From positions 1 through 28,358 of the forward strand of contig NW_021836772.1 in assembly GCF_006345805.1 (NCBI RefSeq): a stretch of DNA of 28,358 bases, in the 5' to 3' direction. Below are positions 1,341 to 28,358 of the stretch, one piece after another. Within the stretch, counting starts at the first letter, position 1. Each line of letters starts with the position of its first letter. The stretch is from Octopus sinensis. Taxonomy: Eukaryota. Under the pieces are notes generated by a model that saw only the letters and a program-made list of their open reading frames with translations, made no database searches and was not told the origin of the DNA. The translations under genes and the position numbers were made by a program.

Positions 1341-1454
1341 GAAATTTTATTGCTCACAACGATCGTTTCGACCCCGTTTTGTATCGATCCCTCGCGGGTG
1401 GGCTGCAGTATAAATGACTGTGCTGCATCCCTCGGTGCAGAAGTGTCTCGTCAA
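1341..1454 (-). ncRNA. Degenerate type I hammerhead-like motif with long stem II (Penelope-type remnant)
   Basis: Minus strand: TTGACGA GAC ...78 nt including stem... GTC GAAAC GATC GTT GTG, followed by AGCAATAAAATT. Stem III is palindromic (ACGATCGT). The start of stem II is homologous to 24413-24516. Confidence 0.55.
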
Positions 1455-1656
1455 CTTCTATTATAAGAGGTATCCCGTTATTTGTCTCTATCATTTGCTA
1501 TATGCTTAACGATCACTGGGGAGTTCCTAAAGTAGATCCAGGGACAATTGTGTGATTACTGTAGATGACGCCAGGTAGACATAGGCAGTGAACCTGCTTC
1601 ATCGGCTTACTACTAGGAACCTACCTAATATTTAAATAATTATTCATATACAGTGA

Positions 1657-10860: not shown

Positions 10861-11322
10861 TACACACTTCCTATCTTCCATCTCCTCTTCCTAACCCTCT
10901 CCTCTTCCCGACACTCTCCTTCAGTATATATCGGTATTTAGCAAAGACTTTGTGTGGAGCAGCGTGAAGGGTAAAGATAAAGTATGGAAAGAGTAGGAGG
11001 AGGAGGAGAAGCAGGAGAGAAAGAAGGAGGCAGGAGGAGGAAGAAGGGGAGTAAGTTAATGTTTGTATTTGATGTGATTTAGTTTTGATGTAGTTCAGCT
11101 TCGATTTTAATACATCTGATCAACCTTTGGTGTTATCATCTCATCTGACCTCTGCTATACTCTTCACACGTCGTCTCCTTATGTAATCTCCACCTTTCAT
11201 TCACTGAAAATATTCGAATATGACTGTTCTTTTCTACGCAGCTTCATTTTATTAACATCACGGCTGGCTTTTTCTCACTGACAGATAAGTAATGAAGTTA
11301 TTTCTTTTGAATTGGACTTCAA

Positions 11323-11363
11323 CTGTTACATTGTTTCGGAATCGTTTCACCTCTTCAGGTGAT
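11323..11363 (-). ncRNA. Minimal hammerhead-like motif (Penelope-type)
   Basis: Minus strand: cac CTGAAGA GG tgaaacgatt CC GAAAC aat GTA. The core is canonical and G10.1-C11.1 is present; stem I is not paired. Confidence 0.55.
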
Positions 11364-12283
11364 GTGTAAATATAATACTGTCAGTTACGCTTGTTGTCAT
11401 TAGTCGTCAGCTTAGTTACGGAATTACAAAAAAAATTACCATCTAACTATCTCTTTAAAAAGTATTCATCTTTAGCTAAAGAAAATGCGCATCTTAATCT
11501 AAAGAAGGTGCATCTATAGCTAAAAGTTTGCATCTATAGATAAAATATGAGCCGTCGTGTGTGTGTATGTATATATATATATATAAATATATACACACAC
11601 ACACACAGCAGGCTCTCTGTCTATCTGTCTATACATCCTATATATATAAACACGAAATACGAAAGCAAATGAGTTCAATGCGTAAACGACGAGAGAAACA
11701 AATAGAAAACAGGACAAGTAACATAAAGAACGACCCTTCGTCAATTGTCGGCTGTCTATCTACTCCTCATTTCGAGCCTTGAACGACAATATGAGTTTTC
11801 GAAGTCAGTTGCTCCCATACGTACCAAAATATAATTTGGGACTTATGGAGGATCAAGGCTGGGAGCAAAAACAGGACAGTGGAGACAAACAAGGAAACCG
11901 AACGAAAACAAACATGGAGGGTCGTTAGAGCAGAATGAAGGTAAAAATAGCGAACGCTGGAGAAATGTTTTCTTTGACAAGAGAAAAGATATGAGAGAGA
12001 TAGGATACATGCTGTCCTTACGACAGTAGCGAGAGAAAAGAAGGATGATCATGTGAGGAAGAGAAAGATGGGTGATGGTCACGTGTGAGCAACGAGAGAG
12101 AAAAACGGAGAAACAGGGGGAGAGAGAGAGAGAGACAAACAGATAAATAGAAAACGGTGAAAGGGAGGAAAAAAGGGAATTAGAGAGAGGATGAGAGAGA
12201 AAGGAGTAGAGAGTAGAGTCGCATCAAGAAGATAAATTTGAAAATGCATGCGTGGCGTTCAATCAAATAACTAATATAATTAA

Positions 12284-15947: not shown

Positions 15948-16728
15948 ATCCTTTCTACTGTAGGCACAAGGCCTTAAATTTAGGGGAAGGGATTAAGTCG
16001 ATTATATCGACCCCAGTGCGTAACTGGTACTAATTTTATCGACCACCGAAAGGATGAAAGGCTAAGTCGACCTCGGCGGAATTTGAACTCAGAACGTAGC
16101 GGCAGACGAAATACCGGTTTCTTTACTACCCACAAGGGGTTAAAACACAGAGAGGACAGACAAGGACAGACAAACGGATTAAGTCGATTACACCGACCCC
16201 AGTGCGTAACTGGTACTTATTAAATCGACCCCGAAAGTATGTAAGGCAAAGTCGACCTCGGAGGAATTTGAACACAGAACGTAGCGGGAGACGAAATAAT
16301 CTATTTCTTTACTACCCACAAGGGGCTAAACACAGAGAGGACAAACAAGGACAGACAAGCGGATTAAGTCGATTACATCGCCCACCCCCCACCGTGAGTA
16401 ATTGGTACTAATTTTATCGACCACCGAAAGGATGAAAGGCAAAGTCGACCTCGGCGGAATTTGAACTCAGAACGTAGCGGCAGACGAAATACCGGTTTCT
16501 TTACTACCCACAAGGAGCTAAACACAGAGAGGACAAACAAGGACAGACAAACGGATTAAGTCGATTATATCGACCCCCCGTGCGTAACTGGTACTTAATT
16601 TATCGACCACCGAAAGGATGAAAGGCAAAGTCGACCTCGGCGGAATTTGAACTCAGAACGTAGTGGCAGACAGAATACCACAAAGCATTTCGCCCGGCGT
16701 GCAAACGACTCTGCCAGCTCGCCGCCTT
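15948..16728 (-). mobile_element. SINE family D: one head, four tandem body units and an (ATT)n tail
   Basis: GATTAAGTCGATTA recurs at 15991, 16177, 16362 and 16554 (periods 186, 185, 192). A single head GGCGGCGAGCTGGCAGA lies at about 16710-16726. Confidence 0.9.
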
Positions 16729-18090: not shown

Positions 18091-18312
18091 AAGCGGCGAG
18101 CTGGCAGAAGCGTTACCGAACCGGACAAAATTCTTAGTGGCATTTCGTTCGTCTTTGAGTTCTGAGTTCAAATTCCGCTGATGTCGACTTTTTTTTAAAA
18201 TTATTTTTTAAGGTTTAATAAAATAAGTACCAGTTGAGCACTGTGGTCGATGTTAACAACTTTCTTCCTCCCTCCGAAATTTCTGGCCTTGTGCCAAAAT
18301 TTGAAAAACCAA
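18091..18312 (+). mobile_element. SINE family D, diverged copy
   Basis: GCGGCGAGCTGGCAGAAGCGTTA...GTTCTGAGTTCAAATTCCGC...AAGTACCAGTTGAGCACT...GGCCTTGTGCCAAAATTTGAAA. Confidence 0.85.
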
Positions 18313-19865: not shown

Positions 19866-19901
19866 CTATCTGAAGAAGGACTCTCTCCGAAACGTTGGAT
19901 A
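19866..19901 (+). ncRNA. Minimal hammerhead-like motif (Penelope-type)
   Basis: ctat CTGAAGA A GGA ctctc TCC GAAAC GTT GGATA. AACGTT is palindromic; stem I is imperfect. Confidence 0.55.
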
Positions 19902-21427: not shown

Positions 21428-21671
21428 TATATATATATGATATATATATATATATTGTTATATATATGATAAATATCAAAGTGAGTTATATACAGTAGCG
21501 GTAAACATCGTGACGTATTTTTGCCATTTCAATATGGCTACCCCTAAGGGTGGATGCTACTGTAGTTTTTAGCCCCAGGAGGACACACTCCTCCAGCTGG
21601 CCATAGACACACTATCTGTGTCTGTCAGTATTTGCAAAGGGAAGTCATCCTTCCCGTCTTCACTTATGATA

Positions 21672-21715
21672 CACACGGACTCGAGTTTCGAGGTATTGAC
21701 CTTCGTCAGCGTGTG
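21672..21715 (-). ncRNA. Type I hammerhead ribozyme motif (left arm)
   Basis: cacacg CTGACGA AGGT caat ACCTC GAAAC TCGA GTC cgtgtg: perfect 6-bp stem I, palindromic stem III ACTCGAGT, GUC site; one G is missing at the stem II base. Confidence 0.8.
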
Positions 21716-21921
21716 ACAATAATAGTTGTCGCCGAGAATTAGATTTCCTTCACAAATACTTATACTTTTTCCAGCGCCCACTGTCGCTGATATTGAAAAA
21801 GTGAAATCAAAACAATGATAAATTGTTTGATTTCACTTTTTCAATATCAGCGACAGTGGGCGCTGGAAAAAGTATAAGTATTTGTGAAGGAAATCTAATT
21901 CTCGGCGACAACTATTATTGT

Positions 21922-21966
21922 CACACGCTGACGAGAGGTCAATACCTCGAAACTCGAGTCCTGTGT
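21922..21966 (+). ncRNA. Type I hammerhead ribozyme motif (right arm)
   Basis: cacacg CTGACGA GAGGT caat ACCTC GAAAC TCGA GTC ctgtgt: canonical core, perfect 5-bp stem II, GUC site; stem I has a 1-nt bulge. Confidence 0.85.
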
Positions 21967-22306
21967 ATCATAAGTTGAAGACGGGAAGGATGACTTCCCT
22001 TGCAAATACTGACAGGACACAGATAGTGTGTCTATGGCCAGCTGGAGGAGTGGTGTCCTCCTGGGGCTAAAAACTACAGTAGCATCCACCCTTAGGGGTT
22101 AGCCATATTGAAATGGCAAAAATACGTCACTATATATATATGCATATATATATATATATATATGATATATATATATATATGTATATTATATGTATATATA
22201 TATTATATAATATATATGTATATATATATATATGTATATAATATATATATATGATATATATATGTATATATATATGTATATATGTTATATATATGTAATA
22301 TATATG

Positions 22307-23811: not shown

Positions 23812-24031
23812 CGAGGTGGGTGTGCTGAAAAGTGTCTGAATTTGGGTAAAAGAAAATACGAGAGGATAAGTTAATTGTGATTTTATTCACCATATCCCCC
23901 TCTCAGATTCACACACTTCTTGCAGCAGTCCTTCAGTTTTTTTAAGCCTTGTAAAAGAACTCGGAAAGTTGGGCCTCCAGCCAGGCCTTTCGCAACACCC
24001 TTAAAACCAGGAACTTTTCAGCACCCCATCA
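23812..24031. mobile_element. Mariner-type MITE with both TIRs and TA flanks
   Basis: TA+CGAGGTGGGTGTGCTGAAAAGTGTCTG ... CCAGGAACTTTTCAGCACCCCATCA+TA. A second partial copy lies at 17409-17577. Confidence 0.85.
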
Positions 24032-24412
24032 TATACATATCTGCTTATATAGGGAGATTTAAAATTTCAGTTGTGCGATATATAACCAGTGTTTAGAACC
24101 CCATGTCTACTGATTTGTATTGTTGTACTTGTTTTATTTGGTAGGAATCCGAAGTTTGGGTGTGTCACAAAGTACATCTGGGAACCAAAACAAAAACACG
24201 AGAGATTATAAAATATTTAATTACACAATCTTGCATACGCAGCGTTTTGATAATATAATTTAAACCATATAATCAATAATCAATGATCTTTGCTAATAAA
24301 ACACATACAAGATAGTGTAATTAAATATTTTATAAACAACTCTTGTTTGTAATAAATAAATTATAATAACAAATGAAAGACAGAAGATGGAATATACGAG
24401 AATATATTATTA

Positions 24413-24516
24413 ATCACAACAATTGTTTCGATACATCTAGCATCGACTCCTCTTGTGGGACACAGAAAAACTGGTTCAGGAGTATCCGGTGGTGCAGACG
24501 TATCTCGTCGGGTGAT
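24413..24516 (-). ncRNA. Type I hammerhead motif with extended stem II and U4C core variant
   Basis: ATCAC CCGACGA GATAC ...65 nt... GTATC GAAAC AATT GTT GTGAT: perfect 5-bp stems I and II, palindromic ACAATTGT, GUU site, and an internal ACTCCT/AGGAGT helix. Confidence 0.75.
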
Positions 24517-25478
24517 AAATAAATAAGAAATATCGTTAAAATGACTGTTCCATAATGTAACTTTCCAATTTGTAGAGAGAAAAACAGCCAGACGTGGGAA
24601 AATTCTTCATATATATAGAAGACCAAAAATAAAATTGCAGAAGACAAAGAGAAACGACCACTTAATCCACCGAGAAAAAGTATTGAAAATAACCGTTAAC
24701 CGATAAATTATAATAGATATATATGCAAGATTCTTGATGTGGACAGGTGTGTTGGAGCAAATTTTGTTGTGTTTTGGGAGGGTCACTGTGCCAATAATGA
24801 TAACACACGCACTGGTTTTATTTCACTTATTCGTTATTAGTGAATCAGTTAGTTATTTAACCCACGAACAAATCGATCACTTGCTTAATCAGTCGGTTAA
24901 ACAATCAATCGTTTAGTCAAATATCTTTCGTTGCCATTTACGATCTCATTTAGAACATGCCCTCTCCTCTAGGCCTGCATCAAGTCTGTTTTCTTGTTAA
25001 TATCTATGTTTATATAGTTGGTCGTTGTATAATCATGAGCCTGAAGAAAGGGAGAGAGAGAGAAAGGAGGAGTATGCGCGTGTCTGCATCTATGTGAGTG
25101 TGTGTGCGTGTATGTGCGTGTGAATGGCCTACCTGAGCATGTGCGTTCTTCTCATCAGTGAATGTATTTATCGTTGGCATAAGATACTGCAATATACGAT
25201 TAAGTCAAAAAGGATACATTCTCTGAGGAATTTTGGTTTGCGACTGTTGGTGCTGCCACCTACACTTACTTTCGGAGTAAGAAACGGAGAGAAAAAGAGT
25301 TTGCTAAGAAACAGAAGGGACGGAAAATTTCCCTCAATGGGAGAGAACCACTCAGGGCTTATAAATCTTTTTTTTTTTAATTTCATTAGTAATATGTGAA
25401 GTCATTTTCTTATGACTGAGATAGCATAAGAGATAATATTTCCATATACATTTATTTTTACTCAATTTTAGTGTCCTA

Positions 25479-25699
25479 TACGCAGCACGCTTGTTTCTGT
25501 AATTTATTAAAACAAAAACAGGGTTTGAACAATTACAGCGTCTTTCGACGTTGCCTCTTTGCTTTTCGAAACGCTTCTTCCAGTGGTCCACAAGCTTGCT
25601 TATTGCTTCGGAGAAGAATGTTTTCAGATGGTTGCGCAGACAGTTATGCATCACTCCCTGCGCTTCTAAGTCTGAAGCAAACTGACAACCTCGAAGCTT
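25479..25699 (-). mobile_element. Mariner (DD34D) transposase C-terminal remnant and degraded right end
   Basis: KLRGCQFASDLEAQGVMHNCLRNHLKTFFSEAISKLVDHWKKRFEKQRGNVE (25541-25699) matches the mariner end LRG.RF.S.EE....V..WL..QPK.FF..GI.KLV.RW.KCIE..GDYVE. The element ends CG+TA at about 25479. Confidence 0.88.
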
Positions 25700-25769
25700 T
25701 ATAAGCATATTTATAAACATCAGCAACATCAATTCCTTTGCTGTTTTTTAGAGCAACTACTTAATCCTT

Positions 25770-25893
25770 GCAATAATACGGGCTTAAAAATGTTGGCACA
25801 AGGCCAGCAATTTCTGTGGTGGGATGAATAAGTCGATCACATCGACTCCGATACTCAACTGGTACTTACTTTATCGACCCCGAAAGGATGAAA
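25770..25893 (-). mobile_element. SINE family D 3' fragment
   Basis: GGCACAAGGCC...AAGTCGATCACATCGAC...AACTGGTACTTACTTTATCGACCCCGAAAGGATGAAA. Confidence 0.85.
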
Positions 25894-26004
25894 AGGACAA
25901 TGGAACGTAAAAACGGGTGATAACAATTCTGTCAGCTCTCTACCTTAGAATTTTGCAATAATATTGCCATGAAGGCTTTAGATAGGTTGTAAGTGCTGAA
26001 AGGT

Positions 26005-26150
26005 CGAATGGTTATTGTGTTCGCTTCATAACCACAATATCTCAGTTTCGATTCTATTGCTTGGCATTTGGGAAAATGTTATCTTTTATAATTTCGGGTC
26101 AACCCATACTTTGTCAGTGAATTTGGGTGAACGGAAACTATAGAGAAGAC
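26005..26150 (+). mobile_element. SINE family A-like, old degraded 5' part
   Basis: TTCGCTTCATAACCACA...GTTTCGATTC...GGCATTTGGGAAAATG..T...TGAATTTGGGTGAACGGAAACT..AGAGAAGACCC is collinear with the family A head. Confidence 0.6.
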
Positions 26151-26199
26151 CCCTTAGATTGATTACGCCTGTGATTAAAACATTATTGTCTTGTTACAG

Positions 26200-26391
26200 A
26201 TTGTATCAAATAGATTCTGCCTCAGAGTCGCACTAAAAGTACAAGTGTCTGTGGAAATGACCAGAAGCATATGCATTAACCGAAGACCAAGTAACTGGAT
26301 CGAAAAACTGGATTACTCAATGTTAAATGACGAAGACCTACCCCTATCACATCCACCAGCGTCTCCACCAACGCCACAGCCGCCATTATCC
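26200..26391 (+). CDS. Candidate internal exon (64 codons, phase 0-0), product unknown
   Basis: TTGTCTTGTTACAG acceptor, single open frame IVSNRFCL...NWIEKLDYSMLNDEDLPLSHPPASPPTPQPPLS, and GTAAGC donor. No family was recognised, and the donor coincides with the LINE edge. Confidence 0.25.
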
Positions 26392-27360
26392 GTAAGCAAG
26401 TTCTGGAGCTGTAGTTTTAGTGTTTATTGTTTAGTTAGCCTTGGGAATTAATTTTTATCATTATTCTGCAAACCATCCAGGTATTACTTAAGGCTTTTTC
26501 AGTAGATTATTGAATGCGTTTAGCAATCATTTCGTGTTCACCTGTTTGAAAGTTTGAAAGATTTCAAAGTACTTTCCAATTGTTCGCGTTGCACCGCAGC
26601 CATTGCTTGGATTATTCTTTCTCTCCAGAATTGTTCAACTGCTACACTTACAGCTTGGAACATTTTCGCTAGTGTTTACCCTTCCATTATCCAGAACTCT
26701 TCCTCCATATCCTATGCTTCTTTTATGCCGTTGACCTTTTCATTGAGTTTTGTTTTTGTTTTCGATAAAAAGTTCTTGATAAAAATCGTTTTAGGTTTGA
26801 GTCGAATTATTTGTTTTGTTCAAAGAAGCATTGTTGCTTCTCAGATCGATTGATTCTTGGCGAATTAGCAAAGATATCGTGTTTTAGACATTCTTTGATT
26901 TTGGGTAATTCCTCTGATGTTATTTTCCCCTCCTTTATTGTTACATTTCATTGATGATTTCGTTAAAGATTGAGATATCTTTTATTACATTTTCTCTCTC
27001 TATTGTATGTTTATTTTCTACGTCGTTTGTTTGGGATGAGATCTTCCAATATCACAAATGTTGAGGGGTACCGATTTTGGTTTGCGACGAATATGATGCC
27101 TGCATATATTAACCAATATATCCTTTCACCGATTTAACGATATTTCTTATTTATTTATCACCCGACGAGATACGTCTGCACCACCGGATACACCTGAACC
27201 AGTTTTTGATGCTTTCCTGTTTTGCCAGTGTCTACAACTCGACAGAAGACCTTCCATTTTTTTATATCTAAATTAGTCTTGTTACATTTTATCTCTGAGA
27301 CAGAGACTTCTGTTTGGTCGATTGAAAGATCTTTCACCGATTTAATTCCTTATTTTCTCC
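26392..27360 (-). mobile_element. R4/Dong-clade (RLE) non-LTR retrotransposon remnant, heavily degraded and interrupted
   Basis: Minus-strand pieces in the expected order: ELNR|LIYAGII, KIKECLKHDIFANSPRINRSEKQQCFFEQNK*FDSNLKRF(Y)QEL, VEQFWRE, NNWK, AFNNLLKKP*VIPGWFAE..KLIPK...(N)YS..TCL. Confidence 0.78.
27133..27207 (+). repeat. 75-bp inverted copy of 24466-24540 (5' half of the long-stem-II hammerhead unit)
   Basis: 74/75 identical to the reverse complement of 24466-24540; contains ATCAC CCGACGA GATAC at 27157-27173. Confidence 0.95.
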
Positions 27361-27570
27361 TTTTTAATTACTGCCGTATACAACGGTTCCGGTTTTAGAA
27401 CCTTTCACTTTTAGAGAAAGTACTTTGATATTCCCTCCCATAGAATTACGTAGGCATGATGGGGGCTTGAGGTTGTTTTATTATTTCTTTCGTTTTCACT
27501 GTTCGAAGCCTATCTTCGCGATCCATGTTCTTCATGTTGATATGTTAGATCGATATTATTTTCGCCGTTT

Positions 27571-28170
27571 GAAGGTGGCGAGCTGGCAGAAACGTTAGCA
27601 CACCGGGCGAAATGCGTAGCCGTATTTCCTCTGCCGTTACGTTCCGCGTTCAAATTCCGCCGAGGTTGACTTTGCCTTTCATCCTTTCGGGATCGATAAA
27701 TTCAGTACCAGTTACGCACTGGAGTCGATGTAATCGACTTAATATCTTTGTATTTGTGTGTTCCCTCTACGTTTAACCCCTTGTGGGCAATAAAGAAATA
27801 AGAAACATAAGCATGCCGGGTGAAATGCTTAGCGGTATTTCGTCTGTCGCTACGTTCTGAGTTCAAATTCCGCCGAGGTCGACTTTGCCTTTCATCCTTT
27901 CGGGGTCGATTAAATAAGTACAAGTTACGCCCTGGGGTCGATATAATCGACTTAATCTGTTTGTCTGTCCTTGTTTGTTCTCTCTGTGTTTAGCCCCTTG
28001 TGGGTAGTAAGGAAATAGGTATTTCGTCTTTCACCCGTCTTTACGTTCTGAGTTCAAATTCCGCCGAAGTTGACTTTGCCTTTCATCCTTTCGGGGATCG
28101 AGGAAATAAGTACCAGTTACGCACCGGCTCGATGTAATCGACTAGTTCCCTTCCCACCAAGTGTAGAAAT
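27571..28170 (+). mobile_element. SINE family D: head plus three tandem body units
   Basis: Head GAAGGTGGCGAGCTGGCAGAAACGTTAGC, then GTTCAAATTCCGCCGA..GACTTTGCCTTTCATCCTTTCGGG three times. Confidence 0.9.
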
Positions 28171-28358
28171 AATCCTTTTCGTCGTTTGCATTTTGCTCTC
28201 CGTTACTATTGAGGTTATGTATTTCTTTTTATTCAAACTGTTCTAGTTCTCTATCAAATAGGGTCCTTTATTTTGTTTTGAATTAGTCTGTTGGGACCCA
28301 GTTTTTTTTATTTTAGATCAGTATCATTTTCTTTCCAGCTATATACATATGCCGTAGT

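What the first reader, a model, noticed from the sequence alone, without database searches (positions are those of the whole stretch)
24413..24516. Complete hammerhead fold with 75-nt stem II domain and U4C core
Both flanking helices are perfect (ATCAC/GTGAT and GATAC/GTATC). Stem II continues through GTC/GAT, TGCA/TGC(T)A and ACTCCT/AGGAGT to a 26-nt loop, and stem III is a dimer-type palindrome. PLE hammerheads are normally minimal, so a large structured stem II with C at core position 4 is atypical. The C is also present in the second copy at 27163, so it is not a one-off mutation. This is a candidate new hammerhead variant class in cephalopods; novelty is unverified.
Basis: partly seen in the sequence, partly recalled or inferred. 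Interest (0 to 1): 0.85.

Follow-up and report, generated by a model that had tools for sequence, protein, structure and literature searches.

The report
Mutated hammerhead ribozyme in short repeat
The hammerhead-shaped sequence is real, but it is one slightly mutated copy of a short repeated element that carried an ordinary self-cutting hammerhead ribozyme, so it is not a new ribozyme class.

Summary
A relaxed hammerhead descriptor finds only this site in the window and nothing in 300 shuffles.

The interpretation only partly holds.
- **Second copy.** The copy at 27157 is a 75-nt 5' fragment (27133-27207, 99% identical). It lacks GAAA, helix III and the cleavage site.
- **Other relatives.** C (1472-1342, 66% identical, nhmmer E=7e-9) has core UUGACGA. 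D (11387-11316) has the canonical core CUGAAGA and a 14-nt helix II. Position 4 is therefore U in two of three lineages, and C4 is specific to the A/B lineage.
- **Helix II.** The distal helix (ACUCCU/AGGAGU) is not kept in C, and is perfect only in A.
- **Canonical hammerheads nearby.** Two type I hammerheads with a canonical core lie at 21923-21966(+) and 21715-21672(-). They match Rfam Hammerhead_1 at 28.2 and 23.7 bits (E=5e-5 and 1.6e-3). A model built from A and C ranks them as its best hits outside the family.
- **Precedent.** A natural U4C hammerhead is already documented in a viroid.

Verdict: a near-intact, probably crippled member of a known kind of retroelement-type hammerhead. Only the long helix II insert is unusual.

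The parts
24404..24538 (-). Copy A of the ~131-135-nt repeat unit (TAACGA ... AATAA). It holds the complete hammerhead-like fold.
   Evidence: Homology with copy C is bounded at both ends (nhmmer E=7e-9). The flanks are not alignable.
24512..24516 (-). Helix I, 5' strand (AUCAC)
   Evidence: 5/5 pairs with 24413-24417
24505..24511 (-). Core box CCGACGA (canonical CUGANGA); C4 is at 24510
   Evidence: Relatives have UUGACGA (C) and CUGAAGA (D).
24430..24504 (-). Helix II domain, 75 nt. The GAUAC/GUAUC base starts with G10.1-C11.1. A proximal extension and a distal ACUCCU/AGGAGU helix follow, closed by a 26-nt loop.
   Evidence: Only the junction-proximal part is partly kept in copy C.
24426..24429 (-). 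Core box GAAA (G12 A13 A14 A15.1)
   Evidence: invariant in A, C and D
24419..24426 (-). Helix III: ACAAUUGU. It can form 2 bp plus a palindromic AAUU loop, or an 8-bp duplex in a dimer.
   Evidence: Copy C has ACGAUCGU and the neighbouring canonical hammerheads have ACUCGAGU.
24413..24418 (-). U17 (24418), the predicted cleavage site between 24418 and 24417, and the helix I 3' strand GUGAU (24417-24413)
27133..27207 (+). Copy B, a 3'-truncated fragment. It has the unit's 5' end, AUCAC, CCGACGA and the 5' half of helix II. It has no GAAA, helix III or cleavage site.
   Evidence: 75 nt, 99% identical to 24540-24466. Downstream sequence is unrelated. Its 5' boundary coincides with the A/C homology boundary.
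1342..1472 (-). Copy C, an old diverged copy (66% identical). Core UUGACGA, helix II base GACAC/GGGUC, GAAA, helix III ACGAUCGU, GUU^GUGAG. Its helix I 5' strand is not complementary.
11316..11387 (-). Copy D, a degenerate relative: TAACTGA..., AUCAC, canonical CUGAAGA, 14-nt helix II (GGUGAAACGAUUCC), GAAAC, an interrupted helix III, GUU^GAAGU.
   Evidence: ATCACCYGAMGAG occurs only in A, B and D (0 expected). CGAAACAAT occurs only in A and D. Alignment score exceeded by 0/1000 shuffles. Not detected by nhmmer, the CM or Rfam.

Best explanation
The site is copy A of a short (~131-nt) interspersed repeat. Its transcript folds as a type I hammerhead ribozyme.
- Helix I joins the two ends of the unit.
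- Helix II carries a ~65-nt insert.
- Helix III is the classic metazoan 2-bp stem with a palindromic tetraloop, which can become an 8-bp helix when two copies pair.

The founder of the family had the canonical core CUGANGA...GAAA. It would have cut after GUU, as hammerheads of retrozymes and Penelope-like elements are thought to do when they process multimeric or read-through transcripts. That role is inferred, not shown.

Copy A keeps all three helices but carries one transition, U4->C, shared only with its near-identical fragment B. U4C is known to lower hammerhead activity considerably. Copy A also has no helix I/helix II loop contact and no tandem partner for helix III. It is therefore most likely a very slow or dead ribozyme relic, not a selected new variant.
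For: **Non-random motif.** It is the only descriptor hit in the window, with 0 hits in 300 shuffles.

**A repeat family with four members.**
- A/C homology has nhmmer E=7e-9, with sharp ends.
- B is a 75-nt fragment that starts at the same 5' terminus.
- D shares a 13-mer and a 9-mer that occur nowhere else in the window.

**Cores.** A/B have CCGACGA, C has UUGACGA and D has CUGAAGA. By majority of lineages the ancestor was C3 and U4.

**Conservation of structure.**
- Helix III stays self-complementary through a double change, ACAAUUGU in A against ACGAUCGU in C. The window shows no CpG depletion (o/e 1.0) that could explain this away.
- The helix II base has one compensatory U-A to C-G change.

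**Bona fide hammerheads 2.5 kb away.** 21923-21966(+) and 21715-21672(-) have the same architecture: CUGACGA with N7=C, GAAAC, and the 8-nt palindrome ACUCGAGU.
- They hit Rfam Hammerhead_1 over the full model at 28.2 and 23.7 bits, E=5e-5 and 1.6e-3.
- A covariance model built only from A and C ranks these two as its 1st and 5th hits outside the family across 56 kb.

**Literature.**
- Metazoan type I hammerheads have a 1-2 bp helix III with a palindromic loop and work as dimers. PLE hammerheads show a palindromic 15.2-16.2 and a conserved G10.1-C11.1 (PMC4209133).
- Type I hammerheads sit in short non-autonomous repeats in molluscs (PMC7229834).
- U4C 'considerably decreases activity in vitro' (PMC3088659).
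Against: - No Rfam hammerhead model matches A, C or D, even at E<=10.
- Copy C keeps only 1 of 5 helix I pairs. With two full sequences, covariation is not distinguishable from shuffles (128/500).
- D is supported only by my block and alignment tests, not by nhmmer or the CM.
- A and B are 99% identical and each starts at the unit's true 5' end. They may therefore be separate recent insertions from a C4-bearing master, which would mean C4 did not stop propagation.
- No homologues from other loci or species could be retrieved, so the family consensus rests on four copies in one window.
- Whether the long helix II is ancestral or D's short one is ancestral remains unresolved.
Confidence: 0.68

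Rival explanations
1. It is an active, selected hammerhead variant. The A/B subfamily would propagate with a C4 core, and the enlarged helix II domain would supply stabilising contacts that offset the core change.
For: - All three helices are perfect in A, and the hammerhead fold is co-optimal with the MFE.
- A and B are 99% identical, and B begins exactly at the unit's 5' terminus, as expected for two recent insertions from one C4 master.
- A natural U4C hammerhead keeps enough activity in vivo for viroid infectivity (PMC3088659).
- The long helix II is shared by A and the old copy C.
Against: - C and D have U4.
- B lacks the 3' half, so nothing shows that a second complete C4 ribozyme exists.
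- The distal helix II pairs are not conserved in C (2/6), and the perfect ACUCCU/AGGAGU depends on a substitution unique to A.
- Helix I is an open 5-bp stem with no loop or bulge for tertiary contacts.
- There is no tandem partner for the dimer-type helix III.
- The overall fold energy is not better than shuffles (z=-1.17).
- PLE-type minimal hammerheads cleave poorly in vitro even with canonical cores (PMC4209133).
Confidence: 0.1
2. It is a chance look-alike. An unrelated short repeat would happen to carry near-hammerhead boxes, and helix I of copy A would be a coincidence.
For: - Copy C shows no helix I (1/5 pairs, the random expectation). The consensus fold of A and C is weak (-9.85 kcal/mol) and is not a hammerhead.
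- No Rfam hit.
- With a helix II loop allowed up to 90 nt and one core mismatch, my analytic estimate allows up to tens of chance sites in a genome of a few Gb.
- Conservation between A and C is not concentrated in the core. For example, UCUGCACC in helix II is 8/8 identical.
Against: - 0 hits in 300 shuffles.
- Three independent lineages (A, C, D) keep xxGAxGA, G10.1...C11.1, GAAAC and GUU in order.
- D has the exact canonical core.
- Helix III stays palindromic through a double change.
- The model built from A and C picks out the two Rfam-supported hammerheads as its best foreign hits.
- Real hammerhead-bearing repeats demonstrably exist in this very window.
Confidence: 0.14
3. It is a fragment of a protein-coding exon or of some other non-coding RNA, and the hammerhead resemblance is incidental.
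For: - Two frames are open across copy A. A and C share short peptide words in one frame (RDTSAP, ETIVV).
- Substitutions between A and C show a weak 3-periodicity of 14/6/16 (my chi-square gives p about 0.1).
Against: - No protein in the 5.8-billion-sequence collection shares words with either frame.
- Indels of 2 nt and 1 nt shift the frame between A and C.
- C has an in-frame stop.
- The open frame in A exists only because U4C removes the UGA of CUGA.
- No other Rfam family matches, and there is no tRNA.
Confidence: 0.03

Closest known systems
Metazoan type I hammerheads of short non-autonomous repeats (non-LTR retrozymes, newt satellite 2, Schistosoma Sm-alpha; Rfam Hammerhead_1, RF00163)
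   Same: - Type I topology: the unit's ends lie in helix I.
- Core CUGANGA...GAAA in the family consensus, and a G10.1-C11.1 pair.
- Helix III of 2 bp capped by a palindromic tetraloop, which implies dimeric action.
- It resides in a short AT-rich interspersed repeat, and such repeats are reported in molluscs (PMC7229834, PMC4209133).
   Different: - Copies here are solitary, not tandem arrays of 170-400 nt.
- Helix II is 75 nt rather than about 4 bp plus a loop.
- There are no recognisable loop 1/loop 2 tertiary-contact nucleotides.
- Copy A has C4.
- The Rfam model gives no hit at E<=10.
Minimal hammerheads in the pseudo-LTRs of Penelope-like elements (Cervera and de la Pena 2014)
   Same: - Short helix I (4-5 bp) without a defined loop 1.
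- Helix II longer than usual.
- Palindromic 15.2-16.2 and loop 3, and a conserved G10.1-C11.1.
- High sequence variability between copies.
- Inverted-repeat arrangements occur nearby in the window (21560-22080).
   Different: - No bulged nucleotide between A9 and G10.1.
- Helix II is far longer than the reported 6-8 bp.
- No RT or GIY-YIG coding remnant was found next to it.
- The unit has a fixed 5' end rather than variable 5' truncation.
Natural U4C hammerhead variant of a viroid (cited as ref. 30 in Perreault et al. 2011, PMC3088659)
   Same: The same single core substitution in an otherwise complete hammerhead. It is reported to reduce activity in vitro yet remain biologically sufficient.
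   Different: That ribozyme belongs to a replicating RNA with tertiary loop-loop contacts and is under direct selection. This one is a genomic repeat copy with no evidence of expression or selection.
Discontinuous hammerhead of mammalian Clec2 3' UTRs
   Same: A hammerhead whose helix is interrupted by a long insert. It is a precedent that helices tolerate large insertions.
   Different: There the insert is 150-1500 nt in helix I of a type III motif (PMC6155905). Here it is about 65 nt in helix II of a type I motif.

Membership tests
Hammerhead ribozyme (any type) | Conserved core C3 U4 G5 A6 N7 G8 A9 ... G12 A13 A14 A15.1-U16.1 H17 | tested here: not met
   Copy A matches 11 of 12 constrained positions; position 4 is C. 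The family consensus from A/B, C and D is canonical.
Hammerhead ribozyme (any type) | Three helices around the core, with G10.1-C11.1 closing helix II | tested here: met
   Helix I is 5 bp, the helix II base is 5 bp starting G-C, and helix III is 2 bp plus a tetraloop, or an 8-bp palindrome.
Hammerhead ribozyme (any type) | Helices supported by covariation among homologues | tested here: inconclusive
   There are only two full-length sequences. They show two compensatory pairs (helix II base, helix III), but helix I is lost in C. 128 of 500 shuffles do as well.
Hammerhead ribozyme (any type) | Site-specific self-cleavage 3' of H17 | not testable with these tools
   Needs in vitro transcription and a cleavage assay.
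Rfam Hammerhead_1 (RF00163) and other Rfam hammerhead families | Covariance-model score at or above the gathering threshold (34 bits for RF00163) | tested here: not met
   No hit at gathering, nor at E<=10 in narrow searches of A and C. The nearby 21923-21966 and 21672-21715 score 28.2 and 23.7 bits.
PLE pseudo-LTR minimal hammerhead | Located in the terminal repeats of an element encoding RT plus GIY-YIG endonuclease | tested here: not met
   Pfam found nothing on the six frames of 24000-28358, and no informative ORFs exist. Only this 4.4-kb neighbourhood was scanned by Pfam.
PLE pseudo-LTR minimal hammerhead | Unpaired nucleotide between A9 and G10.1; helix II of 6-8 bp; palindromic 15.2-16.2 or loop 3 | tested here: inconclusive
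   The palindrome is present. The bulged nucleotide is absent. Helix II is much longer (features taken from PMC4209133).
Metazoan non-LTR retrozyme | Tandem repeats of 170-400 nt, each with a type I hammerhead, expressed as circular RNA | tested here: not met
   The copies are solitary and dispersed (1.3, 11.3, 24.5 and 27.1 kb), and the unit is about 131 nt. Expression and circularity cannot be tested here.

The most novel reading that the evidence does not exclude
The A/B lineage may be a currently mobile subfamily. Its hammerhead would work with C at core position 4, helped by a ~65-nt helix II domain that replaces the usual loop-loop contact. That would be a natural compensated core variant in an animal genome.
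Probability: 0.08. Interest if true: 0.6.

Novelty: new member of a known kind. Interest (0 to 1): 0.25.

Why it matters
- If the best explanation is right, this is routine repeat annotation: one more family of hammerhead-bearing short retroelement relics in an invertebrate genome.
- There are two modest points of interest. First, at least two diverged copies carry a ~65-nt insert inside helix II, which is unusual for type I hammerheads. Second, Rfam thresholds miss all such copies in this window, including two with a canonical core.
- The finding would only bear on how much core variation the hammerhead tolerates if the C4 form proved active and selected.

Tried and rejected
**Searches for homologues outside the window. 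All failed.**
- Translations of two frames across copy A against the protein collection: no candidates.
- The 126-aa ORF lying between A and B: no homologue.
- Exact look-ups of three window ORFs: not on record.
- Metagenome scan with GACGAGAYACNTCTGCACC: 61 loci, all matching the seed only.
- Viral-contig scan with the 3' block: 3 chance hits.
- Supplements of the PLE paper are not held.

**Ideas considered and rejected.**
- That the 75-nt inverted pair A/B are the terminal inverted repeats of a 2.7-kb DNA transposon. There is no target-site duplication, and the identity starts at the repeat unit's own 5' end.
- That B continues as a diverged 3' half. Its alignment is no better than shuffles.
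- That the CAATTG/CGATCG difference is simple CpG decay. The window has CpG o/e of 1.0.
- That the ORF at 25352-25732 is a mariner transposase remnant. This rested on memory only, and Pfam found nothing.
- That the motifs at (+)19870 and (-)11410 are further hammerheads. They give no Rfam hit and show no helix I.

Full report
**1. The observation**

On the minus strand, 24516->24413 reads as follows:

ATCAC | CCGACGA | GATAC GTC TGCA CCACCGGAT ACTCCT (26 nt) AGGAGT CGA TGCTA GAT GTATC | GAAA | CAATTG | TT ^ GTGAT

- a 5-bp helix I;
- a core box that differs from CUGANGA only at position 4 (C at 24510);
- GAAA;
- the 8-nt palindrome ACAATTGT;
- U17, with the predicted cut between 24418 and 24417.

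*Chance.* I scanned with a deliberately relaxed descriptor: one core mismatch, helices of >=4 bp, and a helix II loop up to 90 nt. It finds this site alone in the window and nothing in 300 dinucleotide-preserving shuffles. My composition-based estimate is about 3e-4 per window. It does not exclude a handful of chance sites in a genome of a few Gb, so statistics alone cannot settle the origin.

*Thermodynamics.* The sequence does not fold better than shuffles (z=-1.17). The fold with helices I and II is co-optimal with the MFE, and it dominates the ensemble with pair probabilities of 0.5-0.84. In that fold, part of the core pairs with the helix III region. Keeping the core open costs 3 kcal/mol.

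**2. The 'second copy'**

The pattern ATCACCCGACGAGATAC recurs at 27157 on the plus strand. The shared segment is only 75 nt (27133-27207 = 24540-24466, one mismatch). It contains:
- 24 nt of leader;
- the helix I 5' strand;
- CCGACGA;
- the 5' half of helix II.

It then breaks off in the helix II loop. What follows is unrelated to A or C. It therefore has C4, but it is not a second hammerhead. Being 99% identical, it is also not an independent witness for selection.

One thing it does show is that the identity begins within 2 nt of the point where homology with the old copy C begins. That point is therefore a real element terminus. B is more likely a separate, later-truncated insertion than an arbitrary segmental duplicate.

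**3.

*Copy C.* It lies at 1472-1342, minus strand. Low-stringency blastn and nhmmer show 66% identity over about 131 nt, E=7e-9, with non-homologous flanks. It reads:

AGAAG | TTGACGA | GACAC ... GGGTC | GAAA | CGATCG | TT ^ GTGAG

- It has U at position 4 but U at position 3.
- It keeps 4 of 5 helix II base pairs, with one U-A to C-G compensation.
- Helix III stays palindromic through a double change (CAAUUG to CGAUCG).
- Helix I is lost (1 of 5 pairs).
- Most of the distal helix II pairs are lost: 8 of 12 proximal and 2 of 6 distal survive.
- The window is not CpG-depleted (o/e 1.0), so the palindrome-preserving double change is not trivially CpG decay.
- B and C share an A where copy A has the U that makes ACUCCU/AGGAGU perfect. 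That helix is therefore particular to copy A.

*Copy D.* It lies at about 11387-11316, minus strand, and reads:

TAACTGA...ATCAC | CTGAAGA | GGTGAAACGATTCC | GAAA | C AATGTAACA G | TT ^ GAAGT

- The 13-mer ATCACCYGAMGAG occurs only in A, B and D (none expected).
- The 9-mer CGAAACAAT occurs only in A and D. In D it lies 12 nt downstream of the 13-mer.
- The alignment of D with copy A, once A's helix II interior is removed, is exceeded by 0 of 1000 shuffles.
- D is too broken for nhmmer, my covariance model or Rfam to detect, so I treat it as a probable relative.
- Its core is fully canonical.

*What the cores say.* Taking A/B, C and D as three lineages:

| Core position | A/B | C | D | Inferred ancestor |
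|---|---|---|---|---|
| 3 | C | U | C | C |
| 4 | C | U | U | U |

The inferred founder core is CUGANGA. U4C belongs to the A/B lineage only.

**4. Real hammerheads in the same window**

Listing every CTGANGA site exposed a ~520-bp palindrome at 21560-22080. Each arm carries:

GUCACACG | CUGACGA | GAGGU-CAAU-ACCUC | GAAA | C-UCGA-G | UC ^ CGUGUG

- One arm has lost G10.1 and the other has lost one G of helix I. Their consensus is a perfect type I hammerhead.
- Rfam Hammerhead_1 matches both over the full model at 28.2 and 23.7 bits. That is below the 34-bit gathering score, but E=5e-5 and 1.6e-3.
- They share the finding's architecture: N7=C, G10.1-A10.2, GAAAC, and an 8-nt AC-NNNN-GU palindrome. 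Its inner tetramer (UCGA) differs from those of A (AAUU) and C (GAUC), yet all three are self-complementary.
- A covariance model built only from A and C with the hammerhead structure returns these two sites as its 1st and 5th hits outside the family in the whole window, at 12.2 and 9.3 bits. It bridges the helix II interior with a local end.

Hammerhead-bearing repeats are thus demonstrably present here, and the finding resembles them specifically.

**5. What it is and how it works**

The best-supported reading is a short interspersed repeat whose transcript is essentially a type I hammerhead:
- the unit's ends lie in helix I;
- most of its length (75 of about 131 nt) lies inside helix II;
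- helix III is the classical metazoan 2-bp stem with a palindromic tetraloop, which favours cleavage in dimers (PMC4209133; PMC6155905).

By analogy with retrozymes and Penelope-like elements, the ancestral ribozyme would process multimeric or read-through transcripts of the element (PMC7229834; PMC8557442). This role is inferred, not shown.

Copy A is the best-preserved copy, but several things argue against activity:
- it carries U4C, which considerably decreases activity in vitro (PMC3088659);
- it has no loop or bulge in helix I for tertiary contacts;
- it has no tandem partner;
- minimal PLE-type hammerheads cleave poorly even with canonical cores.

I therefore expect little or no activity at this locus.

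**6. Context**

- There is no tRNA.
- No Pfam domain was found in the six frames of 24000-28358 or in the local ORFs.
- No ORF of >=110 aa in the window shows an RT or endonuclease; nearly all are translations of simple repeats.

The label 'PLE hammerhead' is therefore not demonstrated. The element looks non-autonomous. The two open reading frames across copy A have no relatives. One of them is open only because U4C destroys the UGA of CUGA.

**7. Comparison and novelty**

- The closest known things are metazoan type I hammerheads of short repeats and PLE minimal hammerheads.
- A natural U4C variant with retained biological function is already on record for a viroid.
- Long inserts in a hammerhead helix are also known, as in helix I of the discontinuous Clec2 ribozyme.
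- I found no description of the ~65-nt insert in helix II, which is shared by A and C. Two searches (hammerhead ribozyme with 'cephalopod' or 'octopus') returned no paper describing a cephalopod hammerhead.
- The interior of that insert is not structurally conserved between the two copies, and D lacks it.
- I rate this a new member of a known kind, of low to moderate interest.

**8. Limits**

- No sequence from elsewhere in the source genome or from related species could be obtained.
- All family-level inference rests on four copies in one 28-kb window.
- Covariation statistics with two full-length sequences are not significant.
- The decisive work is a genome-wide census of position 4 against copy age, and a cleavage assay of the native sequence against its C4U revertant.

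Noticed in passing
window 21560-22080 (hammerheads at 21923-21966 + and 21715-21672 -): A ~520-bp palindrome (arms 100% complementary over 109 nt, 14-nt centre). Each arm carries a type I hammerhead with a canonical core (CUGACGA, GAGGU-CAAU-ACCUC, GAAA, palindrome ACUCGAGU, GUC site). Each has one 1-nt deletion. Rfam Hammerhead_1 scores 28.2 and 23.7 bits, below the 34-bit gathering score, so the default Rfam scan misses them. The inverted arrangement resembles the inverted partial copies described for Penelope-like elements.
   Followed up: partly
window 19866-19900 (+): CTGAAGA-A-GGA-CTCTC-TCC-GAAAC-GT-T resembles a PLE-type minimal hammerhead: a bulged A after A9, a 3-bp helix II and an ACGU palindrome. 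It has no convincing helix I and no Rfam hit at E<=10.
   Followed up: partly
window 11401-11420 (-): A second TAAC...CTGACGA string (TAACTAAGCTGACGA) lies about 25 nt upstream of copy D. It may be a partial internal duplication of the repeat's 5' end.
   Followed up: no
window 16011-16708 (+), 27570-28250 (inverted), 25826-25904 (fragment), also ~18218-18302: A ~190-bp tandem repeat family, with 4 copies at 16 kb and an inverted array next to copy B. It translates to recurring peptide-like strings. Its identity is unknown.
   Followed up: no
window 25352-25732 (-): A 126-aa ORF between copies A and B. It has no Pfam domain and no homologue in the protein collection.
   Followed up: yes
whole window: The DNA is AT-rich (34% GC) and full of (TA)n, (CA)n, (CT)n and TCTA microsatellites. 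CpG o/e is 1.0, so there is no sign of CpG depletion.
   Followed up: partly
window 24413-24516 vs 1353-1459: Substitutions between copies A and C fall 14/6/16 over the three phases of one reading frame. This is weak 3-periodicity (p about 0.1), and I regard it as chance.
   Followed up: partly
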